Virus record (IMG/VR): IMGVR_UViG_3300042934_000547
Location: 124,001-188,000 of that record
Reading direction: 5' to 3' (one strand)
DNA: 64,000 nucleotides
Shown: in pieces, positions 8,057 through 54,654 of the stretch
Layout of the letters: every line of letters begins with the position of its first letter
Position numbering within the stretch: the stretch's first letter is position 1
Made by a program: the position numbers and the translations under genes
Notes under the pieces: model-generated
The model's input: only the letters and a program-made list of their open reading frames with translations
What the model was told of the DNA's origin: nothing
Databases searched by the model: none

Positions 8057-8068
8057 CAATTAAGTGTT
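8057..8068 (-). promoter_or_regulatory. Late-type promoter AACA-N6-TG upstream of gyrBA
   Basis: Sense AACACTTAATTG. Confidence 0.55.
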
Positions 8069-8120
8069 CACAATAAAAACTAGATGTAAGTCGTTAAACT
8101 TACACCCAGTTTAATTTGTA

Positions 8121-8990
8121 TTAGTCTTCAAATGCTTTTTTATTTGCTGCAACGCCATTATTAGCAGGTGCTGCCTGTTGGTTTCTCATATTGAATCCGT
8201 TATTCGCTGTTTGAAAATTGTTTTGCATTGGATCAGCAGCGAATGGTGTATCATAACCGCCCATACCCATATTCATCATATTTGGATTTTGGTTAGCTCC
8301 GAATTGAACTCCACCTTGTGGCATTCCTTGTGGCATTCCGAATTGAACTCCACCTTGTGGCATTCCCCAATTCTGGTTCATAGCTGGGTTTTGATTAGCA
8401 CCGTAATTCATATTCATTGCCGGATTAGCTCCCATGCCGAAATTGTAGTTTCCGCCTAGTATGCCCTGTAACATAGCAAAGTTGTTGTTATTTGAATGTA
8501 TATTTGTATTCATTGAACTAAATTTACTGAAGCTGTTTATTGCAACTTCATATACTTTAGGTAACTTCTTGATGTATGGTATCATCTGAGCATACACACT
8601 CAAGAAGTCTCCTGCTAAATCAACTCCGAAGAATTTGATATTTTGAAGCAGGAACACAGCTTTATTCACGATATTTTGTACATCTTCTAAGCTGAGATTT
8701 TCCCAAATTGGAAACTGTTCTTTACACCAATTACAGAAGTAAACTGGGAATCCATTCTCATCTACTTTGCCTGTAGCTTCAACAATAAAATTTTGTGCAT
8801 TTTTGTGTGTACATAAAGCAGCAGCCGCTTCCACGTCAGTTACTTCGAATACACCTCTTGATGTTCCTTTTAATAATTCTGCATTCTTTCCTTCCATGGC
8901 AGGATTTTCCATAGTTGGTTTTTGAAACACTGGTGGTGTTGTAACTCCACTATTAAACATAAATCCTGCATTATTGCCAAAATAACTCAT
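8121..8990 (-). CDS. Early protein with Cys/His Zn-binding motif and N/Q/G/M-rich low-complexity tail
   Basis: CTH...CNWC; GMPQGGVQFG repeats; strong RBS; TATATTATA promoter. Confidence 0.75.
   Translation of the reverse strand: MSYFGNNAGFMFNSGVTTPPVFQKPTMENPAMEGKNAELLKGTSRGVFEVTDVEAAAALCTHKNAQNFIVEATGKVDENGFPVYFCNWCKEQFPIWENLSLEDVQNIVNKAVFLLQNIKFFGVDLAGDFLSVYAQMIPYIKKLPKVYEVAINSFSKFSSMNTNIHSNNNNFAMLQGILGGNYNFGMGANPAMNMNYGANQNPAMNQNWGMPQGGVQFGMPQGMPQGGVQFGANQNPNMMNMGMGGYDTPFAADPMQNNFQTANNGFNMRNQQAAPANNGVAANKKAFED
8298..8366. repeat. 30-bp intragenic direct repeat x2 (period 39)
   Basis: TCCGAATTGAACTCCACCTTGTGGCATTCC at 8298-8327 and 8337-8366. Confidence 0.9.
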
Positions 8991-9035
8991 TTTGTTATTT
9001 CCTCCTAAAATTTTATTTGGTTTTTATTTCACATT

Positions 9036-9044
9036 TATAATATA
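9036..9044 (-). promoter_or_regulatory. Early-type promoter TATATTATA
   Basis: Motif about 45 nt upstream of start 8990. Confidence 0.7.
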
Positions 9045-9059
9045 TATTTATAAAGTGTT

Positions 9060-9392
9060 TTAATACAATGCCAATATAGCTGTTTTATCATCTTGTTCGT
9101 TCACTGGTATTTTATTAATAAAGCTATTCAAATGGTCTTTATTAGAAAAATACTTTTGAACGTATTGAACCACTTCGAAATGAAAAATTTCACATACGAC
9201 TGGAAATATCGTTATATCTGAGCCTTTATTACTCAATTTATAATGATATATCAATTCATTAGTCCAATCAATGATTAGCTTTGAACCTTCAAAGTTACCA
9301 TATGCAACTCTTTCGTTATCCATATATAGTGCAAATGGGGCTGTTTCTCCCTCAATCTGAGTGTATATATTCTGGAATGTAACTTTATCCAT
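9060..9392 (-). CDS. Hypothetical protein
   Basis: ORF with GGAGG RBS. Confidence 0.65.
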   Translation of the reverse strand: MDKVTFQNIYTQIEGETAPFALYMDNERVAYGNFEGSKLIIDWTNELIYHYKLSNKGSDITIFPVVCEIFHFEVVQYVQKYFSNKDHLNSFINKIPVNEQDDKTAILALY

Positions 9393-9446
9393 TAAACAAG
9401 TCCTCCTAATTCGAATTAAATTATTTAATGGTTACATAATATATAA

Positions 9447-9881
9447 TTATAAAACAGCTTTGAATTCTTTGATTTGATTTGTCAATATTAATAACGGTTC
9501 AACAGTACGTGTATCTTTAACTTTATTGAATGCCTGAATAATAAAAGTGTAAGCTTGTAACTTCTGCTCTAACTCTGCTATATAGCTATTCATTTGTGTT
9601 AATGATATTTGATCAGTTGGCGGTTGTGTTATCATAAGAAGTCTCAATCCCTCATAATACAACCTGTTTCTTTGATATCTTTCATTAGCGGCTGCAATAC
9701 ATGGAACTAATAACAAATCACTTGTAAGATAGTTCACATATTCATTTGGAGCCACTGACCCATAGGCTATGTCTTTAAATAACCTATCACTTTCTCTCAT
9801 TATTGTATCCTGACTTTTCTGTACTAGAAAATTAGGACCGAATTTTTTGATTGCATCTGAAATATAATTTTTTGCATTCAT
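9447..9881 (-). CDS. Hypothetical protein
   Basis: ORF with GGGAG RBS. Confidence 0.65.
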   Translation of the reverse strand: MNAKNYISDAIKKFGPNFLVQKSQDTIMRESDRLFKDIAYGSVAPNEYVNYLTSDLLLVPCIAAANERYQRNRLYYEGLRLLMITQPPTDQISLTQMNSYIAELEQKLQAYTFIIQAFNKVKDTRTVEPLLILTNQIKEFKAVL

Positions 9882-9901
9882 CTTGTTTCTCCCTTTCTTA
9901 T

Positions 9902-10453: not shown

Positions 10454-10477
10454 TTTTATTCTCCCATTTTTGTATTT

Positions 10478-10908: not shown

Positions 10909-10953
10909 GTATCCGTCCTCCTTCATCATTATAATATATATTTATTATAACTT

Positions 10954-13106: not shown

Positions 13107-13184
13107 CCCAGTACCTCCTTTCTTATTCATATCTATAATATATATTTCAAACATTTTTACATTAATATAAAGAGGTGATTAAAT

Positions 13185-18095: not shown

Positions 18096-18119
18096 TACTA
18101 CTATGTAAACATATTAATA
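18096..18119. promoter_or_regulatory. Abutting divergent late-type promoters
   Basis: Minus TACA-N6-TA 18096-18107; plus AACA-N6-TA 18108-18119. Confidence 0.6.
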
Positions 18120-18153: not shown

Positions 18154-19122
18154 ATGAGTAAAAATACAATTAAAATGATAAATGAAACCTTTCTATACAA
18201 GTTAAATCAATCAAGAAATGATGCCGCAATTAAGACATACTTAACTAACGCACCACGTATTGATAGAAACACAGAAGGGTTTAAGGAATTTGAAACAATC
18301 GTGAATAGTTATATAAATTCGAAAACTATTATCGATTCAACATTAAATGCTGACCAAGTAGTTTTCACAATGGGCGAAACTCCTATGTCATTTACTGTCC
18401 TTACAGCTAAGGATATTCTAAAAGACAATAAGCATAAAATATTTGTTTCATTATTACCATATGTGAGATATGAGACTAAAGATAGTAACGTCGAAGGTGG
18501 TTTAAGCGTCTCAAACAGAGATATTGATAAATTGATATCTAGATTATATTCAGTTATCAATCATCAGGTATATTATTCTCAATATAAAAAATTGAGTCTT
18601 GATAGCACTATACTTGAGACTGGTGCTGAAATATTTGCATCATTATATGGATACATCTTTAATTATCTATATAAGATCAACCAAAATGATATCATGTTTG
18701 CTAAGGTTAAATACTTGGCTGCTAGATATTATTTAGAGGGAATTCTTAATATAGAAAGAGAGAATATCCATAAATATGCGTTATCAATTTCTAAACTTAC
18801 TGAACGTCAGGCTAACGTAATTGATATTTCCAAGACAAAAGATAATACGTTTAGTGATCTACAAATGTTCACTAAAGCTGTAGCTGACGTAACTGGTATC
18901 GATGTTAAATTGGATGCATTCATAGAAAAATGGTCTTATGTATTTTCAAGTACGACATTCTATGCTTTAGAATCATTCACTCATTTTGCTGATTTAGTAT
19001 CAAACGTTTATGTTGGTGCATATGCTAATAACCAGAAAACAATTGAAAAAATCTGCGGCATAGAAATGATTAAAGAATTTACCTTGGCTATACATAAACT
19101 AAATAGAGAAAGATTATCATAA
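18154..19122 (+). CDS. Hypothetical, probable virion/tail protein
   Basis: First gene of a late + strand operon; AAGGAG RBS before MSKN. Confidence 0.6.
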   Translation: MSKNTIKMINETFLYKLNQSRNDAAIKTYLTNAPRIDRNTEGFKEFETIVNSYINSKTIIDSTLNADQVVFTMGETPMSFTVLTAKDILKDNKHKIFVSLLPYVRYETKDSNVEGGLSVSNRDIDKLISRLYSVINHQVYYSQYKKLSLDSTILETGAEIFASLYGYIFNYLYKINQNDIMFAKVKYLAARYYLEGILNIERENIHKYALSISKLTERQANVIDISKTKDNTFSDLQMFTKAVADVTGIDVKLDAFIEKWSYVFSSTTFYALESFTHFADLVSNVYVGAYANNQKTIEKICGIEMIKEFTLAIHKLNRERLS

Positions 19123-23928: not shown

Positions 23929-23940
23929 AACACAATTATA
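23929..23940 (+). promoter_or_regulatory. Late-type promoter AACA-N6-TA
   Basis: AACACAATTATA upstream of the RBS of 23965. Confidence 0.6.
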
Positions 23941-23964: not shown

Positions 23965-24300
23965 ATGACTAATGAAATCATTTCGGCACTATTCCAAGCT
24001 ATAATGACAGGACTTGTTGGACTAGTAATAGCTTGGGTAATAAAAAGACCGATGGATAAATATCTAGCTAAAAGGGATCAAAAAGATATAGCGTTCTCTA
24101 AATATATAGCTACCTATTATTCATCCATTCTCAATAAAGTAGATACCTTGGGTGAGATTGTTATAATACAAGCATGTGCCACCAGTTGTGATAATGCAGA
24201 GATTATGAAATTGGTATCTGAATACAAACAACTGGACAAAGAATTTAGAGAAGATACTGCTAAAAAGATGGCAAGTTTTTCTCAGTTTGACTATAATTAA
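23965..24300 (+). CDS. Membrane protein, holin-like candidate
   Basis: Single N-terminal TM helix; own late-type promoter and terminator. Confidence 0.5.
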   Translation: MTNEIISALFQAIMTGLVGLVIAWVIKRPMDKYLAKRDQKDIAFSKYIATYYSSILNKVDTLGEIVIIQACATSCDNAEIMKLVSEYKQLDKEFREDTAKKMASFSQFDYN

Positions 24301-25639: not shown

Positions 25640-25909
25640 TTATACAAATCTCAATTCTTTCATTTTCTTTAATGCTAATTTAGTTTCATATTGATTTAAT
25701 CCAACAGCATTGTTTAATCCACTTTTGTTAACCCCTTTTTCATATGAGTTAATAATATGATTTCCACTATGCTTATGCATTATATCAATAACGTGAACGT
25801 ATCCGTATTCAGATATAATTTTTTCATAACATGCACCAAATTCATTTTCCTTGACTTTGATAAATCCAATTTCCTCAAATTTTTCATCAGTGGTTTTAAA
25901 TATCTTCAT
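25640..25909 (-). CDS. Hypothetical protein
   Basis: AAGGAG RBS; AACA-N6-TA at 25929-25940. Confidence 0.65.
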   Translation of the reverse strand: MKIFKTTDEKFEEIGFIKVKENEFGACYEKIISEYGYVHVIDIMHKHSGNHIINSYEKGVNKSGLNNAVGLNQYETKLALKKMKELRFV

Positions 25910-25984
25910 TTTGACCGCTCCTTTACTTTATTGTATTGTTGTATGGGTGATATTTTTTAACTATAAGATAAGGAGGTGTTATTT

Positions 25985-28012: not shown

Positions 28013-28082
28013 TTTTCATAACCACCTTTCATAATAAAAAAAAAAGAAACAGACATCACATCTGTTTCATTATTAAATTGTT

Positions 28083-28607: not shown

Positions 28608-30107
28608 CTATGCATTTACTTTATTATAGAATTCAATTAATGAACGTTTGTATTCTGGATCATATTTATCTCTACCCAAATTGATAAAGTTGTTTAAGTT
28701 AACTAATGTATTCTTTGTTGGTAGGTAGTTAACGTATAACAATCCATCATTTCTGTTTATAATCATAGCTCTTCTTGGATTATAAACTAATAATGCTGTT
28801 TGATAGAACTTGTCGTTGATTATCAACTTAACGTTTAATACGTCACCGTCAAAGTCTGCTTGTAGTGATGGCAATATATCAAGTGGAACACCCATTGTGA
28901 AATTATAGCATATTCCAATAACATGCATTTGAATCATACTACCATATTCCAATGTAGGATTTCTGTTTATCATTACTGGAATTCCAAATGGGTATGAGTT
29001 GATAATACTATTAATGATACTTATCAATTCATAATTCTCTTTAAGTCTTCCAACACTCCATATCATGTAAGCATCATTAATACTGATACTTCTTCTATGT
29101 GCAATTATATTTATAATTTTCTGTTGCAACAAATCACACAATGTATAATATGATAGAGTTATTTGGTCAACCTTAAGTGAAGCATCTGGTTTGATAACAT
29201 TTCTTGCTGTAAAGTTATATTTACCACCATATGCTCTCCTTATCAATCCAGTTTTACCTGACAAAATTTCTTCAATATCTGCATATACGTTCATGAACTC
29301 ATCTTGAAGTTTTTGAAGATATTCAGGTATTGATGTTTTATATAGAGTTAATTTATTCCTGTTTATTCTAGCTGTATACATAGCCATATTATTAAAATTA
29401 CCATTGATATCATAATATTCTAATTGTATACCAGAGGTTTTTAATAATCTTAATAATGTAGTATAAACAGGTATACAGCTTGTAAATATTAAGTCTCTAT
29501 TCTTTATGATTTCTTCATATGCATCCTGTTTACTTTGGGTATTAGCCATTTTCTTATAAAATGTAATTATTTCATCGAATCGATTGATGAATTCATATAT
29601 CCCGATTCTAAAGAATGGTTCTTTATCTGGATCTGGAGTCTCTACCGGAATCTCAATTCCATCTGAGTTAAAGTTTTCATCTAGATTCATCATATTATTA
29701 AATGCTTTTTGACCAATAAAACTTTGTATAGTCTTATACATTATTGGATGAATTACTTTATATCCATGCTGTATTACCAACCATCCCGTATAAGCAAAAT
29801 TATCGTCAACAAATTTAACTTTAGTTTTACATTTCGGGCACAGTATTCCTTCATTACTACGTGAACGTAAATTACCACATTCACATTTGTGTCGATCGCC
29901 ATTTGGACTAATATCATCAACACCTCTACCATATCGACTAGAGAATATTCCATCTGGGTCTTTTAATGCTTTTTTGATACCTTGGGCACCAGTAATTATA
30001 AATCCGTTGTCTGTTTCTAAGTCTCGTTTACATTCTTCTTCAAAATTGATTTTTACCAATCTAGATTGGTATTCAATTTCGTTACTATGTCCGTAATCAT
30101 TATACAT
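28608..30107 (-). CDS. Phage multisubunit RNA polymerase beta-prime, N-terminal catalytic fragment (probably non-virion RNAP)
   Basis: GIFS, Zn finger CECG..CPKC, GKTGLIR, NRNPTL, ADFDGD catalytic loop; TATATTATA at 30188-30196. Confidence 0.92.
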   Translation of the reverse strand: MYNDYGHSNEIEYQSRLVKINFEEECKRDLETDNGFIITGAQGIKKALKDPDGIFSSRYGRGVDDISPNGDRHKCECGNLRSRSNEGILCPKCKTKVKFVDDNFAYTGWLVIQHGYKVIHPIMYKTIQSFIGQKAFNNMMNLDENFNSDGIEIPVETPDPDKEPFFRIGIYEFINRFDEIITFYKKMANTQSKQDAYEEIIKNRDLIFTSCIPVYTTLLRLLKTSGIQLEYYDINGNFNNMAMYTARINRNKLTLYKTSIPEYLQKLQDEFMNVYADIEEILSGKTGLIRRAYGGKYNFTARNVIKPDASLKVDQITLSYYTLCDLLQQKIINIIAHRRSISINDAYMIWSVGRLKENYELISIINSIINSYPFGIPVMINRNPTLEYGSMIQMHVIGICYNFTMGVPLDILPSLQADFDGDVLNVKLIINDKFYQTALLVYNPRRAMIINRNDGLLYVNYLPTKNTLVNLNNFINLGRDKYDPEYKRSLIEFYNKVNA

Positions 30108-30187
30108 CTTGTCTCTTCTCCCTATATTTATATTTTTAAGTCTCTTTACCTTAACATATAGTTTTTACTCTTTTAATTTTCTATTAT

Positions 30188-30217
30188 TATAATATATATT
30201 TGTAAAACAAATTATTA
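30188..30217. promoter_or_regulatory. Divergent early-type (minus) and late-type (plus) promoters
   Basis: TATAATATA 30188-30196; AACA-aattat-TA 30206-30217. Confidence 0.65.
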
Positions 30218-30828: not shown

Positions 30829-32025
30829 TTACCAAATTTTAGTCACATCAACGTCAAATATTCTTATTGTAGAGTCATGGAATTTTTTCATATTTTTCTG
30901 CATTATCGTATTAGGGTATCCAACTGTTGTCATACCTATTTTAGTAATTCCTATACGTTTAAATAATGTAGAAGAACATGTTTGACATATACCATCCTTA
31001 CATTCACACATAGAACTATAACGCATTTTGACTTTCTTCCCAATATATTTATTCATATTGTCGGTTGTTAATTCTACTAGTTTAGTTCCTTCGATTATAT
31101 ATCCATAAATCCAACCTCTAATATTTCCATCAGTCAGTGCTACATCAATATACCTGTCCGTGTGACAATCATTAGTTTCAGATTGCACAACATGTTGTAG
31201 AGCCCTTATGAATAACTTAACCCAGTATCCACCAATAGCAGTATTGTTTGATTTCGCATATACCCCTGCTACAAGTGAGTTACCAAATAAGACATATTCA
31301 TCTTTAGAGATTCCATCCATATATGAGCTAACCCCAACATCGAAACCTTTAACTGGATCTATATTTTTAATAGCACCCTTCATTATGTAAATATTCTTGA
31401 AATGGTTATCAATAGAACCTTTTGCACCAGATTTAAATTGTTCCAGTCCCTCATCATTTGGACCTAGGATATTTATAGCTTCATTAGTTAACTCTTTTTC
31501 AATCTTGTCTGATACCTTAAAGTCGCCTTTTTCTAAAGCTTCTTTATTCTCCTTGATAAGTTTCTTCTTCTTGGTTCTAATTTTATCAGAAACTCTAAAG
31601 AAGTTCTCAGAATAATGAGAAGATAGAACAAAAATAAATGATAAGAAAAATTGATATTTATCTTCATATCTAACGAGTTGTTCAGCTGTGATTTTATCCT
31701 CATTTAGTGCAAATGATAGTTTTTCATCAAGTTTCTCATATAATTTCTGAGTTAATGGTTCATTGATATATCCCAAAACATTACTCACATCTTCGATAAA
31801 GTATTTATTAAATACCCATATCCCGAGTGTGGTCTTACATGGTTTGGTATTCTTTTTAACTTTCCCATACTTTCCAGCAGGTATAATGATAGTGTCCTGT
31901 GGATCATATTTGCGAACTTCATTTAAGAATCCAAAGTTTTTAATAATGAATGTTCTAGTTACATCTTTTTCTTCAATATTTAAGAAGTAATTTAGAGTAG
32001 TTTTATCAGTTATCATTTTCGCCAT
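30829..32025 (-). CDS. Phage RNA polymerase beta-prime, C-terminal fragment (probably virion RNAP)
   Basis: TTLG..VFN, SGAKG, SYMDG, bridge-helix-like TAIGGY, DCHT, RYSSMC, GICQTC, MKKFH. Confidence 0.88.
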   Translation of the reverse strand: MAKMITDKTTLNYFLNIEEKDVTRTFIIKNFGFLNEVRKYDPQDTIIIPAGKYGKVKKNTKPCKTTLGIWVFNKYFIEDVSNVLGYINEPLTQKLYEKLDEKLSFALNEDKITAEQLVRYEDKYQFFLSFIFVLSSHYSENFFRVSDKIRTKKKKLIKENKEALEKGDFKVSDKIEKELTNEAINILGPNDEGLEQFKSGAKGSIDNHFKNIYIMKGAIKNIDPVKGFDVGVSSYMDGISKDEYVLFGNSLVAGVYAKSNNTAIGGYWVKLFIRALQHVVQSETNDCHTDRYIDVALTDGNIRGWIYGYIIEGTKLVELTTDNMNKYIGKKVKMRYSSMCECKDGICQTCSSTLFKRIGITKIGMTTVGYPNTIMQKNMKKFHDSTIRIFDVDVTKIW

Positions 32026-35190: not shown

Positions 35191-35220
35191 TATATATATG
35201 TTTTCTTAAACATTTCTATA
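35191..35220. promoter_or_regulatory. Divergent pair of late-type AACA-N6-TA promoters
   Basis: Minus 35191-35202, plus 35209-35220. Confidence 0.7.
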
Positions 35221-36878: not shown

Positions 36879-36957
36879 CTCACTTCTTTATAGAAGAATA
36901 GTTACGTGAGTTATATATCCAACCAAGGATATATTTCGATTATATTATTTACTATTC
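36879..36957 (-). promoter_or_regulatory. Predicted 5'-leader pseudoknot, copy C
   Basis: S1 GAATAGT/ACTATTC, S2 CTCAC/GTGAG, AAATAA loop, two inserted hairpins. Confidence 0.75.
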
Positions 36958-36962
36958 AATTC

Positions 36963-36995
36963 TATAATATATATTTAAAAATACTAATTTTTACA
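36963..36995 (-). promoter_or_regulatory. Bipartite early-type promoter TGTAAA-N18-TATATTATA
   Basis: + TATAATATA 36963-36971, TTTACA 36990-36995. Confidence 0.8.
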
Positions 36996-39356: not shown

Positions 39357-39935
39357 TTATATCCTCCTTAATATTGGCACTTGTGAAGCTGTTTTGATGT
39401 CATTTACTTGATAGTTAACCTGCTTACACGCTAACTCAAATTGTGGGTTATCAATAACCTGATTGATGTAACCAAATCTACGTACTGCTTCAATATACAT
39501 TGATGGACTTATATCTCCTATTGCATAAGAAGATTCTAACATACGCAATCCAGCATATTTACCACCCTGATAATCTACATTCATTGAAGGTATACCAAGA
39601 ATAATATCGAAATTCTCTCGTATATAATTGTGTAGTATCTCCAAGTAACCCATGTCAAATTCATCCTGAGTTACATAAATAAATATTGGTTCACTAGAAC
39701 CTAATAATCTAACTAAAAATGGTTTAGCATCATCAAGTTGCTTTCTGAATAATCTATTAGCTTCAACAGCATTATCTTCTATTATAGCTGTTACGGCATC
39801 GACCATTGGTATTAGACAAGCTAAATCTGGTAATATAGTTACATTAGGGTGAGTCATTGTTATCGACTCATACCCTAATGCATATGCAACACTACCTACT
39901 GGTAGACTATTTAGATTCGTTATTATATTTATCAT
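39357..39935 (-). CDS. Hypothetical protein
   Basis: GAGGA RBS. Confidence 0.6.
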   Translation of the reverse strand: MINIITNLNSLPVGSVAYALGYESITMTHPNVTILPDLACLIPMVDAVTAIIEDNAVEANRLFRKQLDDAKPFLVRLLGSSEPIFIYVTQDEFDMGYLEILHNYIRENFDIILGIPSMNVDYQGGKYAGLRMLESSYAIGDISPSMYIEAVRRFGYINQVIDNPQFELACKQVNYQVNDIKTASQVPILRRI

Positions 39936-43560: not shown

Positions 43561-43658
43561 TTGTTGTCCTCCTTCAATATTATTACTATAATATATACTT
43601 ATTCACTATATTAAATAGTTTTTCAAATATTAATATTAAAATTTCTGGCATAGAAAAA

Positions 43659-43694: not shown

Positions 43695-44042
43695 TTATAT
43701 ACAAAAATAAGATAATGCTTCCTTAACTTCATCCGGTAAATTTGGCGGATAAGAGAAAAACATTCTATCTTTATTTACTACTATACCTAAATTTGGTTTA
43801 TATTCGGGCAACCCGAATAACCAGCTTCCTAATGTATTTACAGATACTTCATTACTGTCGTATTGTATCACAATTGGTTCATCAGTTTCAATTTTGGCGA
43901 AATAGATTTTGTTAAACTTTTTCTTAAAAACCTTTCTAATGTTCACCATTGTTTTTACATAGTTATCCTTAACAAACTCTGGTTTAATTTCTTTTCTGGA
44001 AGTTTGTTTAGATAAACCCCTCAAACAAATACTCTCTGTCAT
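43695..44042 (-). CDS. Hypothetical protein
   Basis: Overlaps the RNase H stop. Confidence 0.6.
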   Translation of the reverse strand: MTESICLRGLSKQTSRKEIKPEFVKDNYVKTMVNIRKVFKKKFNKIYFAKIETDEPIVIQYDSNEVSVNTLGSWLFGLPEYKPNLGIVVNKDRMFFSYPPNLPDEVKEALSYFCI

Positions 44043-44713
44043 ATATAACGCTCCTTACTAATCAATTTAATATAGTTTTCGACGATTTCCTTTTTCATGC
44101 TGTTATGAGAATCTGTTCTATCAGAACTATACTTATTATTCATATTGTCCTCGATAAGCAGATTTCTGGTAATTTTATCTATTTTATCGTTAAAATAAGA
44201 AATCTCTTTAATAAAATTAATATCTGTTATGTTTTGTTTATTTGATTTGTTGAATACATTTCTAGCATTCTCTAATGATGAATCACTCTGCTTCACATGA
44301 CCTTTTTGATGGTAAAATCTTAAATCTAAACCACTATCTAGTATTAATTTCATACAGTATATAAGTTTTTCTTGATTTTTAACAATCCCATTACCACCAT
44401 AGAAGTTTCCATCTTTAAATCTCCAATTATGTACCCATTCTCTCAAGCTATTTATACAAATTAATGAATCAGAAAAAATATTAAATTTGGTAGTACCATA
44501 CGTATTATGAAAGTTTTTTGCTATTTTGATACCCAAAATTATTCCTTCTAGTTCCCCTCTGTTATTTGTTGTGTCTGAAATCACTTTGCCAAAAGCATTA
44601 GTGTATTCTTTTGATTTTATAATAGCTCCTGCACATGAATATGTAGTACCCTTATATATTCTCACTGAGGCGTCGGTAAAAATATTTACCCTGTTTTCGT
44701 AATCTAATTTCAT
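44039..44713 (-). CDS. rnhA: Ribonuclease HI
   Basis: FTDAS, TNNRGEL, FSDS, KGH, NDKID; TATATTATA at 44744-44752. Confidence 0.9.
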   Translation of the reverse strand: MKLDYENRVNIFTDASVRIYKGTTYSCAGAIIKSKEYTNAFGKVISDTTNNRGELEGIILGIKIAKNFHNTYGTTKFNIFSDSLICINSLREWVHNWRFKDGNFYGGNGIVKNQEKLIYCMKLILDSGLDLRFYHQKGHVKQSDSSLENARNVFNKSNKQNITDINFIKEISYFNDKIDKITRNLLIEDNMNNKYSSDRTDSHNSMKKEIVENYIKLISKERYI

Positions 44714-44767
44714 TTTGTTGTCCTCCTAAAATATTATCGAATATATAATATATACTTCTAATATGTT

Positions 44768-46155: not shown

Positions 46156-46245
46156 TTAAATCATACCTTTCGTTTTAGCACCAACATAGATTATACCTAT
46201 TGATAATAATCCTGACAATAAGCTATTAAGAATCTCTCCTAGCAT
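46156..46245 (-). CDS. Small TM peptide (29 aa; not in ORF track)
   Basis: MLGEILNSLLSGLLSIGIIYVGAKTKGMI; AAAGGAG RBS; AACA-N6-TA at 46308-46319. Confidence 0.65.
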   Translation of the reverse strand: MLGEILNSLLSGLLSIGIIYVGAKTKGMI

Positions 46246-46385
46246 ACTTAACTCCTTTCTTTATATCATAATTATTGTGCCCTGAGTTATATTTTATTTT
46301 ATTGCTTTATCTGTATGTTAAAACTTACCCATGTATGCATATCTAAAGAAAAAAAATAAAGAGGGAAGTTATTCCCCCTTTTTAT

Positions 46386-47225: not shown

Positions 47226-47273
47226 CCTCATTTTAGGATAAGATATGAGGTCTTACACATTATTTTCTTATCC
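47226..47273 (-). promoter_or_regulatory. Predicted 5'-leader pseudoknot, copy D
   Basis: S1 GGATAAGA/TCTTATCC, S2 CCTCAT/ATGAGG, AAATAA loop. Confidence 0.75.
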
Positions 47274-47278
47274 ATATC

Positions 47279-47311
47279 TATAATATACATTTGAAATAAG
47301 TTATATTTACA
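47279..47311 (-). promoter_or_regulatory. Bipartite early-type promoter TGTAAA-N18-TATATTATA
   Basis: + TATAATATA 47279-47287, TTTACA 47306-47311. Confidence 0.8.
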
Positions 47312-47340: not shown

Positions 47341-48030
47341 TTAATTAAAAATTCGGTTATAAAATGTAGTGGTGGTTTCTTCTGTATTATTATCTTTATG
47401 AGACACTTTCTTAGTTAATAATCCATTTTCGTCATATGTATATTTAGTTAACTTTCCATATTGACATGTTGAGTACCATTGATTTAATGGATTATCAATG
47501 TAAAAATTATGTATAACAACAGTATCTGTTTTTATTACCGTTGCTTTATATTCTTTCTTACGTGAAGAATTTGGGAAATAAGTAAAGTCCAATTTTCTGC
47601 CATTTATGATAAAAGTGTATGTATCATTAACTATAGTAGCATCCATGATTGTTTTTTCCTTTTTGGGATCTATATCACCAAAAATAGAATCAGTACTACC
47701 CTTAGTGATCTGTATTATTCTCCCTAACTCATCATATGAAAATATCCATATAAAAAGGTTTACACCATCTACGTCTTTTGTATACTCCCTACCTACTTCC
47801 AATTTACCGTTTTCATCATAGACATATTCGCCACACATTGTAGAACTTATTTTAATGATTTTGTCAGTATCATTGAAGTATTCGATATTTTCTGACGATC
47901 TCGTATACTTCTTTTCCCTCCTTACAATTCTACCGAGTCTATCGGTAAACATCAGTGAATGAAATTGTTCCTCACCATTATTCTTTCTCTTTGTTACCAA
48001 AATTACTTTCTTTTCCAAATTTTTGTTCAT
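47341..48030 (-). CDS. Stand-alone YD-repeat early protein (paralog of 46386..47207)
   Basis: FHSLMFTDRLGRIVR, YVYDENGKL, YDELGRI, YTYDENGLL; TATATTATA at 48087-48095. Confidence 0.75.
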   Translation of the reverse strand: MNKNLEKKVILVTKRKNNGEEQFHSLMFTDRLGRIVRREKKYTRSSENIEYFNDTDKIIKISSTMCGEYVYDENGKLEVGREYTKDVDGVNLFIWIFSYDELGRIIQITKGSTDSIFGDIDPKKEKTIMDATIVNDTYTFIINGRKLDFTYFPNSSRKKEYKATVIKTDTVVIHNFYIDNPLNQWYSTCQYGKLTKYTYDENGLLTKKVSHKDNNTEETTTTFYNRIFN

Positions 48031-48125
48031 CTTGTTTATTCTCCTTTTTAGGTTTTTAAATAAAAATCTATGTTTTTATTCATATCTATAATATATACTT
48101 GAAAAAATAACTAGAGAAAAAAGAA

Positions 48126-48157: not shown

Positions 48158-48685
48158 TTACTTTCCAGTTGAGCCAAAGCCCTTCTCACCACGAGATGAT
48201 GGGGATAATTGTTTTTTAATTACCAGCTTATCAGGTTTAATTCCAGTAGATATAACTAGTTGAGCGATTCTATCACCGATAGAAACTATATATTCACTTT
48301 CACCTAAATTGAATAATACTACCTGAATTTCTCCTCGATAAGATTCATCTATTGTTCCCGGACTATTAAGAACAAATAAATCATGCTTACGAGCTAGTCC
48401 ACTTCTACTACGAACATCGGCGTATAATTCTTCCCAAGGGTTTAATCTGATATTAATAGACGATAAATCAATCCAAGTTCCAGTTGGTATGATTCGTTTT
48501 GATTTAGGTGGAATAGTAACATTTATAGTGCTTTGTAAATCCATTCCTATAGAACCTTCATCTTCGAATTTAGGTAAGAATTTTTCATCTGTAACCTTTA
48601 CATCCATTGTGATTTTTGGTATATTTGGTAGTGCTGACAGTGTACCAGTAAAACACATTTCTGAATTAACTATTAAATTATCCAT
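48158..48685 (-). CDS. dut: Trimeric dUTPase
   Basis: All five motifs: GMDL, RSRSGLA, GTIDESYRGEI, GDRIAQL, RGEKGFGSTG. Confidence 0.95.
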   Translation of the reverse strand: MDNLIVNSEMCFTGTLSALPNIPKITMDVKVTDEKFLPKFEDEGSIGMDLQSTINVTIPPKSKRIIPTGTWIDLSSINIRLNPWEELYADVRSRSGLARKHDLFVLNSPGTIDESYRGEIQVVLFNLGESEYIVSIGDRIAQLVISTGIKPDKLVIKKQLSPSSRGEKGFGSTGK

Positions 48686-49274: not shown

Positions 49275-50006
49275 TTAAAAATATTGATACGAATCAATAT
49301 AATCAGTGGTAGATAATGAAACTAATCTTTGAACCCCATCTTCAAATTTATCACTATATATTGGAGTGAAGAGTTTAATCTTACCAAAATTATCAATGTA
49401 AGATAATAGTGAACCGAATTTGTCATAGATATATGTATCTACAGCATCTTCTTTATTTGGTTCAGATACGATTAAATATTTCTTTGTTCTACCTGTTGAT
49501 AGAGTCTCATATCTGTATAATTGAGTAATATTAGTTTTTAAATCTCTTTCTTTCGTAATTCTTCTGTTCTCGTCATAATCATAATCTATTGAAACAAATC
49601 CTCTCTGATTTATTAATAGATCACCATCATCATATGTATATTTAGAGATCATTCTACCTAAGTCATCGCACTCCTCTATTAATAAACAAGGATCATTATT
49701 GTCATATTTATAGAAGATTTCGTGTATCTTATTTTTTATACTATTTGTTGAATGTATAAGCCTTTGTAGTTCATCATAATAACTTTCTTTAATAACGTTT
49801 AAATTATTTTTAAAGTTAACTGCTGTGACAGATTTTGTATTATTATCAGAAAAAACTGTCATTTGTTCCCACTCTGGTTTAGCTGTAGGGTTCTTAAAAC
49901 TCTGCATCCTAATTACCTCATTTTCTCCATTGTAGAATACCTTATCTACTGAATTATTTGAATACTTTCTTGTTACGATTTTTGTAACTTGGTTTTTGTT
50001 AATCAT
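49275..50006 (-). CDS. Stand-alone YD-repeat protein
   Basis: YYDELQRL, YTYDDGDL, YDYDENRRI, YIYDKFGSL. Confidence 0.75.
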   Translation of the reverse strand: MINKNQVTKIVTRKYSNNSVDKVFYNGENEVIRMQSFKNPTAKPEWEQMTVFSDNNTKSVTAVNFKNNLNVIKESYYDELQRLIHSTNSIKNKIHEIFYKYDNNDPCLLIEECDDLGRMISKYTYDDGDLLINQRGFVSIDYDYDENRRITKERDLKTNITQLYRYETLSTGRTKKYLIVSEPNKEDAVDTYIYDKFGSLLSYIDNFGKIKLFTPIYSDKFEDGVQRLVSLSTTDYIDSYQYF

Positions 50007-50896: not shown

Positions 50897-51018
50897 TCGA
50901 ATTCCCCCTGTTATTAAGATTATTAATTCTATCCTATATTAGATTAGAATCAATTTCATAAATATAATATATACTTATAAGTGTTTTTATGGAATTGAAA
51001 TGATTAAGTGATTTAATT

Positions 51019-51417
51019 GGGTAGAAGAATTTTTTACCCTTCTCTTCTCCTTTCCCCCCTTAAACCCCCCTTTCCTCATCTCATCCCATTCACCCCTCTC
51101 CCTTATAATCTAGATTTAAATTATATTTATTTATTCTTTATTATTCTACCATCAATTCCATTATTCTTTATTTATCTTTAATTTTATTTATTTTTCTTCT
51201 TTCTCTTTATTTCTTTTCTTTATTCTTCCTGAGCTTCATCCATGAACCCCAATCTCGCTTCGCTCGTTCATTGGGTTCATGTCTCTACGAGACATTTTAG
51301 AGTCCAAAGCCCCCTATAGAAAACACCCGGTAGTAAAAAACTACCGAATGCGGGGGCTTGGACATAGTTACAACGCTCGACAATATTAGTATCAACTTTT
51401 GTGATTATCCTATTGTT
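51019..51417 (-). other. Non-coding structured locus: candidate replication origin / primer RNA
   Basis: Late-type motif 51406-51417, three GC-rich hairpins 51241-51363, about 190-nt purine tract, G-runs 51037-51102; no ORF. Confidence 0.55.
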
Positions 51418-51491
51418 ATTCGTAAATATTTTTTATAAATTTTATAGTCCTTCAACAATACTATAAATAATCCTTAGGAGGATATAAATAA

Positions 51492-52106
51492 ATGAATATA
51501 AAAAATAAGATTAGGTTATTCTTTCATAAATATAATTTAGATAATATATTTCTATTCTTTAATAATGATATAGATTTAGAAACTAAAACGACCATTCTGA
51601 GTGAGGAAGAAATATTAAGCAATCCTTTAGCTAGTTTATGTCAGCACCCATTTTATTCTATTATAGATATAAGCTTTGTTAATCAAAAAATAGTAATCAG
51701 TCTAGAGTCAATTATAACTCTAACCATATTACATGATTGTATTCAGAATATTTATAATAGAACGTCTGACTATATATTCACATTTGACATCACACGGTCT
51801 TATAAGATAGATAAGCTCGTAATCGATGTGGAAATACAATTCAGTACGACTCAGCAGGCTTATAAGTATTTACTCCTTTTACTGACTGACCTTAACCTAG
51901 AACTTATAGAAAGTGTAACTGTAGAACCTAAAAATATTTACGAGCATGATGATCTACTAAAATATTTCAATTCATATCAAGTAAATTATGAATCATATAT
52001 ACGATATTTGGATTCTAGTAAAACTAAACCTCAAATCAAATATATTATTGATGTACTTCATAATCATAATGATATGATTAAAAATATTCGTGATTTAATA
52101 CATTAG
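51492..52106 (+). CDS. Hypothetical protein
   Basis: GGAGG RBS; AACA-N6-TA at 51454-51465. Confidence 0.65.
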   Translation: MNIKNKIRLFFHKYNLDNIFLFFNNDIDLETKTTILSEEEILSNPLASLCQHPFYSIIDISFVNQKIVISLESIITLTILHDCIQNIYNRTSDYIFTFDITRSYKIDKLVIDVEIQFSTTQQAYKYLLLLLTDLNLELIESVTVEPKNIYEHDDLLKYFNSYQVNYESYIRYLDSSKTKPQIKYIIDVLHNHNDMIKNIRDLIH

Positions 52107-52144: not shown

Positions 52145-52155
52145 ATCTTTATTTT

Positions 52156-53175: not shown

Positions 53176-53243
53176 TTGTATCCTCCTTATATAACCTTTT
53201 AACTTATCGTTTATATAATATATACCCATATCAAATTTTGAAA

Positions 53244-53314
53244 ATAAAAGGGAGGAGTGAAATTAATCACTCCCAACAAGATGATTTTTATTACTTTACT
53301 TATAACCGAGACTT
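53244..53314 (-). ncRNA. Candidate small RNA (about 70 nt)
   Basis: AACT-N6-TA at 53314-53325, terminator 53254-53273, no minus-strand ORF. Confidence 0.3.
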
Positions 53315-53339
53315 ATGATATAGTTATATATATTTAGAA

Positions 53340-53510
53340 AAAAAAATATCGGGTAGGAAATCAATCCTACCCATTAGGCATGTGTAAAAGTAATTGATTT
53401 ATATGAATTAAAAAAGGAACGTTGTTGATGGAAAACAAATTTTAGGAGTTATACATAACAAATTGTCTTCACATGCCTATTTTATTTAACTGAAATTTTC
53501 TTATTCAATT
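53340..53510 (-). ncRNA. Candidate small RNA (about 170 nt)
   Basis: AACA-N6-TA at 53510-53521; 10-bp long-range stem TAGGCATGTG/CACATGCCTA; terminator 53351-53372 plus T-run. Confidence 0.45.
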
Positions 53511-53530
53511 ACCTTATTGTTATTACCCTA

Positions 53531-53644
53531 TTAATTATTATTACGTTGAATTGGTATAATATTATGAGTAAATTTGAATAGTAATTGTTCAGACTCTTCC
53601 ACCATCAATGCCTCTAGTATGAATTTCTTTTCATTAATTGTCAT
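53531..53644 (-). CDS. Small protein (37 aa; not in ORF track)
   Basis: MTINEKKFILEALMVEESEQLLFKFTHNIIPIQRNNN; starts just downstream of the preceding stop; AAGGA RBS. Confidence 0.5.
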   Translation of the reverse strand: MTINEKKFILEALMVEESEQLLFKFTHNIIPIQRNNN

Positions 53645-53647
53645 AGT

Positions 53648-54496
53648 TTATTTTTCCTTTATTATGTATTCTAAATTATTCAGTTTAAGTTTATTAGCAT
53701 AACTAAATAATTCAGTGGCAAATATATCATCACATTGTTTATGCCAATTTATTTTTTCTTCATCTGTCATTTCCAACAGCGTACAAAATTCATCATATCT
53801 ATCTATATATAGATATACCTTAGATTTATTATCCCATACATCCAATGTTTTATCTAATCTCACTTTACGAACAATAAATCGTGCCAGTGTTTTTAATACA
53901 TTGATATATAATTCTTTATTGAAACGTCCTGATTCTTCAAATAACTGAAATACATTTACAGTAAATTTATTGTATCTAATTCTATCAAGACTAATATATC
54001 CACTGTATATATATTTAAATAAATCGTATCGCTCATTTATCTGTATTGGATAACTAAAATTATTCATATTAATATTGTGAGTACATTTCGATACCCAATC
54101 ATTAAATTTCTTTGAATTAATATTAGTATGTAATATCTCAGTTACCGTATAACTAGGTTGTATATTGATGAAATTACTTAATGGTATTTCATCTACACAA
54201 TTCACAGGAACATAGGAATTTGCTCGGTTATTATTATAACAGACGTAATACTTAAGAGCCATAGGTTCATATTTAATGAGTAATCGTTCAATAGCCTCCT
54301 GTATCTCACAGCTTTGAACTATATCCCTAGAACCAAATTCTTTTTTGATTTTTCCAGAGATAGTATAAACTAATGAAACGTCCTCTAGATATTTTTTAGG
54401 ATTGCAAGCCACCAAAACTGAATTTAAAATAATATTGAGTTTTTCTTTATTAAATGGTTCTACCGCCCCGTTCCGTTTAATAATTAAAGTAATCAT
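53648..54496 (-). CDS. ATP-cone protein with degenerate RNR-like C-terminus
   Basis: IIKRNGAVEPFNKEKL...EIQEAIERLL; AACA-N6-TA at 54533-54544. Confidence 0.75.
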   Translation of the reverse strand: MITLIIKRNGAVEPFNKEKLNIILNSVLVACNPKKYLEDVSLVYTISGKIKKEFGSRDIVQSCEIQEAIERLLIKYEPMALKYYVCYNNNRANSYVPVNCVDEIPLSNFINIQPSYTVTEILHTNINSKKFNDWVSKCTHNINMNNFSYPIQINERYDLFKYIYSGYISLDRIRYNKFTVNVFQLFEESGRFNKELYINVLKTLARFIVRKVRLDKTLDVWDNKSKVYLYIDRYDEFCTLLEMTDEEKINWHKQCDDIFATELFSYANKLKLNNLEYIIKEK

Positions 54497-54654
54497 ATTG
54501 TAAGTCTCCCTTCTAATGCCTATTAATTAAATTATCTTTATGTTTGTTTTTTCGTTAAATATTCTACAGTTACATAAATCAATATCTCCGTGAAATTTAT
54601 TATTTTATACCATTGCAACATTATAATAGTTGTGGAAGACTAAAGGAGAATATG

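What the first reader, a model, noticed from the sequence alone, without database searches (positions are those of the whole stretch)
8057..54628. AR9-type late promoters (AACA-N6-TA/G) in a phage that encodes an intact dUTPase
Seen: AACA-N6-TA/G in intergenic DNA at 8057, 18108, 23929, 25929, 28071, 30206, 35191, 35209, 46308, 51406, 51454, 53510, 54533 and 54617, plus GACA/TACA/AACT/AACC variants, so only the central AC and the T-purine are invariant. A dUTPase with all five motifs lies at 48158-48685. Established: AR9 has uracil-DNA and its non-virion RNAP needs template-strand deoxyuridines in this motif. Inference: this phage has thymine DNA yet uses the same consensus, so its specificity subunit must read T. 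Caveat: the motif is short and occurs by chance in AT-rich DNA; the support is positional.
Basis: partly seen in the sequence, partly recalled or inferred. Interest (0 to 1): 0.65.

Follow-up and report, generated by a model that had tools for sequence, protein, structure and literature searches.

The report
AR9-type late promoters, thymine-DNA phage
This soil jumbo phage keeps the whole two-polymerase transcription system of the uracil-DNA phage AR9, including the same early and late promoter sequences. Yet it carries the genes for making thymine DNA, so its polymerase probably reads as T a promoter that AR9's polymerase accepts only as U.

Summary
All 14 listed AACA-N6-TR sites exist. Genome-wide (232 kb, complete) the motif occurs 38 times in sense-oriented upstream DNA against 12.1±3.5 in shuffles. 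The N6 spacing is a sharp peak, and 35 of 38 sites lie 19-60 nt from a start codon. It is the top result of an unbiased dyad scan, it is avoided inside genes (z -4.6 and -5.8), and it precedes terminase, sheath, portal, virion and virion-RNAP genes.

About 45 copies of the AR9 early promoter (AAATATATATTAT-N6-G) precede the non-virion RNAP genes, replication genes and the dUTPase operon. All four nvRNAP core subunits and a gp226 homologue are present (profile hit to 7S01_A, E=3e-30).

The thymine inference is supported indirectly. The dUTPase is intact, a ThyX is also encoded, and both sit in early operons. Five uracil-DNA relatives have none of dut, ThyX or ThyA. AR9's uracil-gating Val206-Ile207, invariant in those five, is Asp-Asn here and hypervariable across about 80 metagenomic relatives, of which 40 of 45 near-complete genomes carry a thymidylate synthase. 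Two such relatives use the same late motif.

No chemistry or TSS data exist. This is a new variant of a known system.

The parts
8057..8068 (-). late promoter motif AACACTTAATTG; +1 lies 27 nt upstream of the gyrB-like gene 5685-8030
18108..18119 (+). late promoter motif; +1 lies 35 nt upstream of ORF 18154-19122
23929..23940 (+). late promoter motif; +1 lies 25 nt upstream of ORF 23965-24300
25929..25940 (-). late promoter motif; +1 lies 20 nt upstream of ORF 25640-25909
28071..28082 (-). late promoter motif; +1 lies 59 nt upstream of ORF 26765-28012
30206..30217 (+). late promoter motif; +1 lies 23 nt upstream of ORF 30240-30794
35191..35202 (-). late promoter motif; +1 lies 29 nt upstream of virion protein gene 32859-35162 (AR9 g260 orthologue). 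The operon continues to the vRNAP subunit at 30829-32025
35209..35220 (+). divergent late promoter motif; +1 lies 23 nt upstream of ORF 35243-35899 (AR9 g261 orthologue)
46308..46319 (-). late motif 63 nt upstream of the unannotated 29-aa ORF 46156-46245(-), which has SD AAAGGAG
51406..51417 (-). orphan late motif followed by a structured non-coding stretch (51180-51406, MFE z -4.28); candidate small RNA
51454..51465 (+). late promoter motif; +1 lies 27 nt upstream of ORF 51492-52106
53510..53521 (-). orphan late motif followed by a structured stretch of about 185 nt that ends in a hairpin plus T9 terminator (53325-53510, z -3.84); candidate small RNA
54533..54544 (-). late promoter motif; +1 lies 37 nt upstream of ORF 53648-54496
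54617..54628 (+). late promoter motif; +1 lies 24 nt upstream of ORF 54652-55464
48158..48685 (-). trimeric dUTPase, 175 aa, five motifs intact. It is the fourth gene of the early operon that starts at the promoter at 50957-50976
50957..50976 (-). AR9-type early (virion RNAP) promoter AAGTATATATTAT-N6-G heading the dUTPase operon
   Evidence: consensus
48081..48100 (-). early promoter
47273..47292 (-). early promoter
44738..44757 (-). early promoter before the RNase H gene 44039-44713
36957..36976 (-). early promoter, perfect 13-mer
30182..30201 (-). early-like promoter: perfect 13-mer but A at +1. It precedes the nvRNAP beta'N gene
13128..13147 (-). early promoter, perfect 13-mer
10924..10943 (-). 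early promoter, perfect 13-mer
9030..9049 (-). early promoter, perfect 13-mer
3248..3267 (-). early promoter, perfect 13-mer
2034..2053 (-). early promoter
55478..55497 (+). early promoter, perfect 13-mer
56739..56758 (+). early promoter
28608..30107 (-). non-virion RNAP beta' N-terminal subunit (AR9 g270 orthologue, 29% identity)
30829..32025 (-). virion RNAP subunit (AR9 g264 orthologue, 32% identity)

Best explanation
The window belongs to a complete 232-kb soil jumbo phage distantly related to AR9/PBS1 (about 25-35% protein identity). It runs the AR9 transcription programme.

Early phase. An injected virion RNAP starts at about 45 early promoters (AAATATATATTAT-N6-G). These express the four non-virion RNAP core subunits, a gp226-like sigma-like subunit, replication genes, a dUTPase and a ThyX.

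Late phase. The resulting five-subunit non-virion RNAP then starts at about 35-60 late promoters of the form (A/G)ACA(A/T)-N6-TA/G. The last purine is probably +1. These sites lie 19-60 nt upstream of virion, packaging and virion-RNAP genes.

Difference from AR9. This phage makes dTMP (dUTP to dUMP by Dut, dUMP to dTMP by ThyX) and destroys dUTP early in infection. Its DNA therefore most likely contains thymine, and its gp226-type subunit must accept T at template positions -11 and -10, where AR9's enzyme demands U. Consistent with this, the 2.1bis helix that forms AR9's uracil pocket is remodelled here.

Shown: motif statistics, gene content, homology and phyletic patterns. Inferred: base composition of virion DNA, TSS positions, template-strand reading and T tolerance.
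For: Late motif:
- 38 sense intergenic hits vs 12.1±3.5 in shuffles, a sharp N6 peak, and +1 at 19-60 nt from a start codon in 35/38.
- Top two entries of the unbiased dyad scan.
- At PWM score >=10, 32 of 61 genome-wide hits lie in 11.4 kb of sense upstream DNA.
- Avoided inside genes at N6 only.
- Precedes terminase, sheath, portal, virion proteins, the 3731-aa tail protein and vRNAP betaN. The early motif precedes nvRNAP beta'C, betaC and betaN, gp226, ligase, RecD, RNase H, dUTPase and ThyX. Fisher p=3e-4.

Machinery:
- The early motif matches the published AR9 consensus.
- Orthologues of AR9 g270, g154, g105, g089 (nvRNAP) and g145, g264, g189, g078 (vRNAP) are present, and g228-g227-g226-g225 synteny is conserved.
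- gp226 homologue: the family profile hits only 7S01_A in the PDB, E=3.1e-30, full length. The AF2 model (pLDDT 80) has 7S01_A and 7UM0_A as top Foldseek hits, then phiKZ gp68.

Thymine:
- dut passes the equivalog cut-off and has five motifs.
- ThyX scores 97.5 bits in Pfam.
- 0/5 uracil-DNA relatives have dut, ThyX or ThyA.
- The criterion is stated independently in PMC7824862.
- No orthologue of AR9's Ugi, dCMP deaminase or deoxyribonucleotidase; no Pfam dCMP deaminase.

Pocket:
- V206, I207 and W208 are invariant in the 5 U-DNA phages.
- This phage has D-N-W, and the column is hypervariable in about 80 relatives, including 16 with Gly, the engineered T-accepting change.

Generality:
- 40/45 near-complete relatives carry ThyX or ThyA.
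- G001 (ThyA) and G016 (ThyX) show the same late motif at z 10-15.
Against: - There is no direct evidence on the bases in virion DNA and no RNA data; no RNA run holds the phage.
- The ThyX is divergent: 78.2 bits against the NCBIfam equivalog cut-off of 87.9, with RKR where I recall the canonical signature as RHR.
- Seven relatives that carry thy or dut genes retain Val at the V206 position. Every residue except Gly has a C-beta. So the substitution alone does not show T tolerance, and the pocket geometry is unknown.
- The gp105 R363/K375 alignment is locally ambiguous.
- The late core is short. About half of the PWM hits lie outside upstream regions, and 3 of the 14 listed sites are not next to annotated genes.
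- Several replication genes (gyrA/B, UvsX, DNA polymerase exonuclease part) carry the 'late' motif only.
Confidence: 0.8

Rival explanations
1. The phage has uracil DNA like AR9. The dUTPase and ThyX-like genes would be inactive, used for another purpose (for example moonlighting Dut functions), or act only on host pools, and the RNAP would read U exactly as in AR9.
For: The promoter consensus is identical to AR9's. The ThyX falls below the NCBIfam equivalog cut-off and has RKR in its signature motif. No phage-encoded UDG was found. Genome GC is low (30%), as in known U-DNA phages.
Against: - All five dUTPase motifs are intact and the equivalog score is passed.
- Dut and ThyX are both in early operons, so they would deplete dUTP during replication.
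- None of five U-DNA relatives has either gene.
- No orthologue of AR9's Ugi, dCMP deaminase or deoxyribonucleotidase.
- The V206-I207 gate, invariant in U-DNA phages, is lost.
- The phage lies outside the monophyletic U-DNA clade.
Confidence: 0.06
2. The DNA carries a modified thymine or another 5-substituted pyrimidine rather than plain T. The polymerase pocket would then be adapted to that base rather than to thymine itself.
For: Jumbo phages outside Chimalliviridae often have modified DNA. The ThyX is atypical. Eleven relatives carry ThyA-family enzymes, and this family also includes the hydroxymethylases. The 2.1bis helix is strongly remodelled, not merely V-to-G.
Against: ThyX-family enzymes are known as methyl transferases to dUMP/UMP, not hydroxymethylases (general knowledge). 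No ThyA-type enzyme is present in this genome. I did not search for hypermodification genes, so this rival is not excluded.
Confidence: 0.1
3. The AACA-N6-TR pattern is not an nvRNAP promoter. It would be a by-product of AT-rich intergenic composition, a 5'-UTR or RNA-processing signal, or a site for another factor.
For: The core is short. It is not enriched window-wide. There are no TSS data. TACA and AATA variants show no spacing specificity.
Against: - Composition-matched shuffles never reach the observed count.
- The N6 spacing specificity is strict.
- Selective avoidance inside genes on both strands fits a DNA-level signal rather than an RNA signal.
- It associates with late functions.
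- The motif is experimentally proven in AR9 and is recovered by the same pipeline in AR9 and in two relatives.
- The complete nvRNAP plus gp226 is present.
Confidence: 0.04

Closest known systems
Bacillus phage AR9 late promoters and the five-subunit non-virion RNAP with gp226 (Lavysh 2017, PMC5312081; Sokolova 2017, PMC5449584; Fraser 2022, PMC9209446)
   Same: The late consensus AACA-N6-TA/G and the early consensus AAATATATATTAT-N6-G are the same. Orthologues of all four split beta/beta' nvRNAP subunits, of gp226 (full-length profile and fold match) and of the vRNAP subunits are present. nvRNAP genes sit behind early promoters and virion genes behind late ones, and some genes have both. g228-g225 synteny is conserved.
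   Different: The genome encodes dUTPase and ThyX, which AR9 and four other U-DNA phages lack. It has no detectable Ugi, dCMP deaminase or deoxyribonucleotidase orthologue. gp226 positions V206, I207 and Y210 are D, N and T here. Position -11 tolerates G, -8 tolerates T or C, and there is an extra preference for T at -7/-6 and A at +2. Protein identity is only 25-35%.
Engineered AR9 gp226 V206G, which accepts T at -10 (Fraser 2022)
   Same: Sixteen of 78 aligned natural relatives have Gly at exactly this position. Among the near-complete genomes, 8 of the 9 with Gly carry a thymidylate synthase. This matches the engineered thymine-tolerant enzyme.
   Different: This phage itself has Asp, not Gly. 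In AR9 the -11 position excludes T through the DNA backbone conformation, which V206G does not relieve. The natural enzymes must therefore differ more broadly.
phiKZ non-virion RNAP with gp68 and its TATG late promoter (thymine DNA, nucleus-forming Chimalliviridae)
   Same: Thymine DNA (inferred here). A multisubunit nvRNAP with a sigma-like fifth subunit; gp68 is the third-best fold match (8QUE_B, E=4e-6).
   Different: The promoter consensus is different (TATG at +1 vs AACA-N6-TA). No chimallin homologue was detected here by sequence (weak evidence). On the beta'N tree this phage groups with the AR9 lineage, not with Chimalliviridae.

Membership tests
AR9-type late (nvRNAP) promoter | Consensus AACA at -11..-8, a 6-nt spacer and T-purine at -1/+1 | tested here: met
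   35 exact sites within 15-70 nt of start codons vs 6.7±2.6 in shuffles; N5 and N7 give 2 each. Top dyad in the unbiased scan.
AR9-type late (nvRNAP) promoter | Lies upstream of late (virion, packaging, vRNAP) genes | tested here: met
   Timing is inferred by orthology to AR9, not measured. 12 virion-class genes have L vs 1 with E; non-virion genes have 5 L vs 14 E; Fisher p=3e-4.
AR9-type late (nvRNAP) promoter | Transcription starts at the terminal purine | not testable with these tools
   No RNA run holds the phage.
AR9-type late (nvRNAP) promoter | A five-subunit nvRNAP with a gp226-type specificity subunit is encoded | tested here: met
   Orthologues of g270, g154, g105 and g089. The gp226 family profile hits 7S01_A at E=3.1e-30, with a matching fold.
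AR9-type late (nvRNAP) promoter | Requires template-strand deoxyuridine at -11/-10 (V206 gate in gp226) | tested here: not met
   This is an indirect test. The V206-I207 pair, invariant in 5 U-DNA phages, is D-N here. The genome encodes dut and ThyX. No biochemical test was possible.
Uracil-DNA jumbo phages (PBS1/AR9, BpSp, phiR1-37, S6, LPJP1) | No thymidylate synthase (ThyA/ThyX) and no dUTPase (criterion from PMC7824862) | tested here: not met
   dut and ThyX are present here. All three families are absent from the five reference phages.
Uracil-DNA jumbo phages (PBS1/AR9, BpSp, phiR1-37, S6, LPJP1) | Ugi-type UDG inhibitor and dUMP-supplying or dTMP-removing enzymes (AR9 g104, g221, g151) | tested here: not met
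   No tblastn match at E<1e-4 to these AR9 genes. No Pfam dCMP deaminase. Small, fast-evolving inhibitors could be missed.
Uracil-DNA jumbo phages (PBS1/AR9, BpSp, phiR1-37, S6, LPJP1) | Falls inside the U-DNA clade on an RNAP tree | tested here: not met
   The five U-DNA phages form one clade (SH-aLRT 93) and this phage lies outside it. The backbone is unresolved.
Trimeric dUTPase (Dut) | Five conserved motifs and a score above the curated equivalog cut-off | tested here: met
   TIGR00576 132.6 vs 102.55; NF001862 131.8 vs 103. Motifs listed.
Flavin-dependent thymidylate synthase ThyX | Thy1 domain and the RHRxxS...S signature | tested here: inconclusive
   Pfam 97.5 bits (cut-off 24.8), but TIGR02170 78.2 is below 87.9. 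The signature reads RKRLASYLIKSGR, with Lys where I recall the canonical motif having His.
AR9-type early (vRNAP) promoter | AAATATATATTAT-N6-G(+1), intergenic, upstream of early operons | tested here: met
   About 45 intergenic copies with 2 or fewer mismatches; consensus. They precede the nvRNAP subunit genes and gp226.
Chimalliviridae (nucleus-forming phiKZ-like phages) | Encodes chimallin | tested here: inconclusive
   phiKZ gp54 finds nothing in the proteome or the six-frame genome. Two large unknown ORFs have no PDB sequence match. Chimallins diverge quickly, and no fold-level test was done.

The most novel reading that the evidence does not exclude
A large, uncultured clade of AR9-related jumbo phages has thymine DNA but keeps both AR9 promoter classes. 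At least 80 IMG/VR loci belong to it, and 40 of 45 near-complete genomes carry ThyX or ThyA. The AACA-N6-TA promoter and its template-strand reader would then predate uracil DNA. AR9's strict uracil requirement (the invariant Val206-Ile207 gate) would be a derived lock, added once in the monophyletic U-DNA lineage. The natural enzymes with Gly, Asp, Thr or Lys at that position would be T-reading counterparts of the engineered V206G mutant. This would break the current dichotomy of 'thymine DNA with a nucleus' versus 'uracil DNA with no nucleus and uracil-gated promoters'.
Probability: 0.55. Interest if true: 0.75.

Novelty: new variant of a known kind. Interest (0 to 1): 0.68.

Why it matters
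AR9's non-virion RNAP is the only characterised polymerase that recognises its promoter on the template strand and needs deoxyuridine there. That requirement has been explained as the way the phage avoids transcribing host DNA with a very short consensus.

A natural relative that uses the same consensus on thymine DNA gives a ready-made comparison for three questions: how the pocket discriminates U from T, which came first (the promoter or the uracil genome), and how promoter specificity is kept without the uracil mark.

It also gives a simple genomic rule for sorting metagenomic AR9-like phages into likely U-DNA and T-DNA types: the presence of dut and thy genes together with the state of the 2.1bis helix. 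This matters for sequencing and library preparation biases. All genes needed to reconstitute the enzyme are identified here.

Tried and rejected
- Megablast of 10 kb against the phage collection found nothing.
- I tested the idea that the 'dUTPase' is really a dCTP deaminase, which would have supported U-DNA. It is rejected: 32 bits against a cut-off of 92.8.
- AR9 gp226 against this proteome with default phmmer found nothing because of the bias filter. The single sequence against the PDB also found nothing. PHROGs has no family for it. Only --max phmmer and the family profile worked.
- gp105 R363 and K375: R363 aligns to Lys with an Arg one residue earlier, and K375 aligns to Tyr. The local alignment is too uncertain to interpret.
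- Chimallin: phiKZ gp54 finds nothing here, and the 568-aa and 537-aa unknown ORFs have no PDB sequence match and are not paralogues. This is not conclusive.
- TSS evidence from public reads: only three holders were listed, all kept as Logan contigs and none on record as RNA. I therefore did not use read laying.
- Rfam and tRNA scans of the orphan-promoter regions found nothing.
- No UDG or dCMP deaminase is encoded in this genome.
- I tested Val206 as a stand-alone predictor of U-DNA and rejected it: 7 relatives that carry thy or dut genes keep Val.
- The tree could not resolve whether the U-DNA clade is nested within, or sister to, the thymidylate-synthase lineages.
- The search of protein representatives, complex prediction and the protein-atlas search were not needed. 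Only genetic code 11 was used.

Full report
CONTEXT. The window is bases 124001-188000 of a 231,975-bp IMG/VR virus record. The record is rated 100% complete, has a 127-bp terminal overlap and is 30% GC. It has no near relative among deposited phages. Its RNAP beta' fragment is 24-29% identical to those of AR9/PBS1, BpSp, phiR1-37, S6 and LPJP1. Public runs place it in a soil metagenome, with partial matches in an unnamed sample and a wastewater metagenome. No listed holder is an RNA run. I called 244 genes with a simple codon-usage and SD-based caller. All statistics below use those calls.

OBSERVATION. All 14 listed AACA-N6-T[AG] sites exist. Across the window the pattern is depleted, not enriched (96 vs 133±11.6), so the test has to be positional.

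Over the whole genome, intergenic DNA oriented with the downstream gene holds 38 hits. This compares with 12.1±3.5 in 500 dinucleotide-preserving shuffles, none of which reaches 38. Spacing is sharp: N6 gives 38, N5 gives 6 and N7 gives 5. In 35 of 38 cases the terminal purine lies 19-60 nt upstream of the start codon.

I then scanned every 4-mer/gap(0-10)/2-mer dyad with early promoters and SD sites masked. ACAT-N5-TA ranks first (35 regions vs 5.3, z 13.9) and AACA-N6-TA second (z 9.4); these are the same motif in register. The logo is AACA-TT-nnn-A-TA-A. With a PWM, 32 of 61 genome-wide hits (both strands, 464 kb) fall in 11.4 kb of sense upstream DNA.

Inside genes the N6 motif is avoided on both strands. 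Counts are 157 vs 221 on the sense strand (z -4.6) and 86 vs 160 on the antisense strand (z -5.8), against codon-permuted genes. The N5 and N7 versions are not comparably depleted. Enrichment upstream plus avoidance within genes is what selection on a working promoter produces.

TACA is not (z 1.5). So -10 A and -9 C are fixed, and -11 and -8 are tolerant.

Three listed sites (46308, 51406, 53510) are far from annotated genes. The first lies 63 nt upstream of an unannotated 29-aa ORF. The other two precede stretches that fold far better than shuffles (z -4.3 and -3.8) and match no Rfam family.

WHAT THE MOTIF IS. The strongest intergenic signal in the genome is a different, long element: TGTAAAA-N13-AA(A/G)TATATATTAT-AGATAT-GAAT, present in about 45 copies. 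Its core equals the experimentally defined AR9 early (virion-RNAP) promoter AAATATATATTAT-N6-G(+1). The AR9 late consensus is AACA-N6-TA/G, with the last base as the TSS.

Orthologue mapping against the whole AR9 genome finds:
- all four nvRNAP core subunits: g270 = window 28608-30107; g154, g105 and g089 elsewhere in the genome;
- the vRNAP subunits g145, g264 (window 30829-32025), g189 and g078;
- conserved g228-g227-g226-g225 synteny.

Promoter class follows function as in AR9. The early motif precedes nvRNAP beta'C, betaC and betaN, the gp226 homologue, ligase, RecD, RNase H, the dUTPase operon and the ThyX operon. The AACA motif precedes terminase, tail sheath, portal, five virion-protein orthologues, a 3731-aa tail protein and vRNAP betaN. 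The DNA polymerase catalytic subunit has both.

I counted genes with a direct or operon-inherited promoter. Virion-class genes are 12 late and 1 early; non-virion genes are 5 late and 14 early (Fisher p=3e-4). As a positive control, the same pipeline returns AACA-N6-TA as the top dyad in AR9 itself (z 17).

THE SPECIFICITY SUBUNIT. AR9 gp226 gives only a weak, bias-prone hit to the ORF at genome 38-1351. That ORF continues across the record junction to a 504-aa protein behind a GAGGGAGGA SD and a perfect early promoter, just as AR9 g226 has an early promoter. It has more than 100 metagenomic homologues of about 500 aa.

A profile of 41 of them (A1) hits a single PDB sequence, AR9 gp226 (7S01_A), at E=3.1e-30 over its full length. 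An AlphaFold2 model (pLDDT 80) has 7S01_A, 7UM0_A and then phiKZ gp68 (8QUE_B) as its top Foldseek matches.

In AR9 the -10 uracil is wedged between gp226 I207 and gp105 R363. The V206 side chain would clash with a thymine methyl, V206G accepts T, and the Val is reported as absolutely conserved in U-DNA phages. I confirmed that AR9, BpSp, LPJP1, S6 and phiR1-37 all read D-x-V-I-W-x-[Y/F].

Anchored on the invariant Trp, this phage reads P-D-N-W-K-T. That puts Asp for V206, Asn for I207 and Thr for Y210. Across 78 aligned relatives the V206 column is G16, I15, V12, T10, gap 8, K7 and others.

Two caveats apply. Seven relatives that carry thy or dut genes keep Val there. And any residue other than Gly has a C-beta. 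So this column alone does not prove T tolerance; it shows only that the constraint seen in U-DNA phages is absent.

THYMINE OR URACIL.
- The dUTPase is genuine. It is the fourth gene of an operon headed by the early promoter at 50957-50976.
- The genome also encodes a ThyX (Pfam 97.5 bits) in another early operon. It is divergent: it falls below the NCBIfam equivalog cut-off, with RKR where I recall the canonical signature as RHR.
- There is no ThyA, UDG or dCMP deaminase. There is no orthologue of AR9's Ugi, dCMP deaminase, deoxyribonucleotidase or NrdEF.
- None of the five uracil-DNA relatives has dut, ThyX or ThyA. LPJP1's uracil-like behaviour is documented in PMC8460666.
- Iyer et al. state that uracil genomes require the absence of thymidylate synthase or Thy1 and of dUTPase.

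An early-expressed Dut and ThyX pair would remove dUTP and supply dTMP during replication. The most economical reading is thymine DNA. Modified thymine is not excluded.

GENERALITY AND HISTORY. Of 45 relatives on contigs of at least 180 kb, 29 have ThyX, 11 have ThyA and 20 have a dUTPase-like gene. Only five lack a thymidylate synthase, and three of those have dut.

Two complete relatives fetched whole use the same late motif. G001 (ThyA) gives 48 regions vs 8.0 (z 14), with N6 63 vs N5 8 and N7 7. G016 (ThyX) shows it as GAAC[A/T]-N6-TA (z 10-15). G013, which has none of the three genes, has a different early core (TATATACTATA) and only a weak AACA signal (z 4.2).

On an nvRNAP beta'N tree rooted with Chimalliviridae, the five U-DNA phages form one clade (SH-aLRT 93). 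This clade sits inside a fully supported ingroup whose other deep branches are the lineages carrying thy or dut genes. The backbone is unresolved. Parsimony therefore favours a thymine-DNA ancestor that already used the AACA promoter, with uracil DNA and the Val gate arising once. Nesting is not demonstrated.

COMPARISON WITH WHAT IS KNOWN. Reviews up to 2026 describe two types: thymine-DNA, nucleus-forming phiKZ-like phages with TATG late promoters, and uracil-DNA, nucleus-less AR9-like phages whose short late promoter is made specific by uracil. I found no paper describing AR9-type late promoters in thymidylate-synthase-encoding phages. No chimallin was detected here by sequence, which is weak evidence.

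The system works like AR9's and is homologous to it part by part. It fails the features that define the uracil-DNA group. I class it as a new variant of a known kind.

LIMITS. Everything is inferred from sequence. There is no base-composition, TSS or biochemical evidence. Gene calls are my own. The host is unknown.

Noticed in passing
window 2034-2053, 3248-3267, 36957-36976, 47273-47292, 56739-56758 and others; genome-wide: Many early promoters carry an extra conserved upstream element, TG(T/C)AAAA, at a fixed distance: 22 nt before the TATATATTAT core in 13 of 35 strong sites. They also share a conserved +1 context, AGATAT-GAAT. The published AR9 13-mer consensus does not include the upstream element.
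   Followed up: partly
window 51180-51406 (-) and 53325-53510 (-): Two non-coding stretches, each directly downstream of an orphan late-promoter motif, fold much better than shuffles (MFE -62 kcal/mol, z -4.3; MFE -37 kcal/mol, z -3.8). The second ends in a hairpin plus T9 terminator. They match no Rfam family and are candidate late-expressed small RNAs.
   Followed up: partly
window 46156-46245 (-): An unannotated 29-aa hydrophobic ORF with a strong SD (AAAGGAG). It lies 63 nt downstream of the late motif at 46308 and just after a terminator-like hairpin.
   Followed up: partly
genome 231686-231975 joined to 128-1351 (+); outside the window (L012/L003): The gp226-homologue gene is split by the record's ends. 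The 127-bp 'direct terminal repeat' looks like an assembly overlap of a circular or circularly permuted genome rather than a true terminus. A gene caller working on the linear record would truncate this protein to 437 aa.
   Followed up: yes
window 47341-48030 (-) and 49275-50006 (-): Two small early-operon proteins flanking the dUTPase have weak RHS/YD-repeat matches (Pfam RHS_repeat E=5.5e-7; TIGR01643 E about 3-5e-4). Their function is unknown.
   Followed up: no
genome 25607-26128 (-), L004:6607-7128: A DUF5662 protein (104 bits) is encoded immediately downstream of ThyX in the same early operon. It may be a partner in nucleotide metabolism.
   Followed up: no
window 30182-30201 (-), 43581-43600 (-), 9429-9448 (-): Early-promoter cores with 0-1 mismatches but A instead of G at the predicted +1. 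One of them sits in front of the nvRNAP beta'N gene. In AR9 a single deviation can inactivate an early promoter, so these may be weak or inactive.
   Followed up: no
relative G013 (L136-L148), 249,585 bp, rated complete: This is the only complete relative with no dut, ThyX or ThyA. It has Ile at the V206 position, a different early core (TATATACTATA) and only a weak AACA-N6-TA signal. It does not group with the known U-DNA clade on the beta'N tree. Its DNA chemistry and late promoter are open questions.
   Followed up: partly
relatives G001, G002, G006, G009, G015, G022, G025, G029, G030, G032, G034, G043: In many relatives the nvRNAP beta'N matches are interrupted by stop codons or split into two pieces 0.2-2 kb apart. 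This suggests introns or homing-endonuclease insertions like those annotated in AR9 RNAP genes. The gene in this window is uninterrupted.
   Followed up: no
window 39907-41613 (-) and 41616-43229 (-): Two adjacent large ORFs (568 and 537 aa) have high coding scores. They have no PHROG, PDB-sequence or AR9 match and are not paralogues of each other.
   Followed up: partly
genome 200289-211484 (-), outside the window: A 3731-aa ORF behind a late promoter has a C-terminal glucosaminidase-like segment (42% identity to AR9 g025). It is probably a tape-measure or tail-lysin fusion.
   Followed up: no
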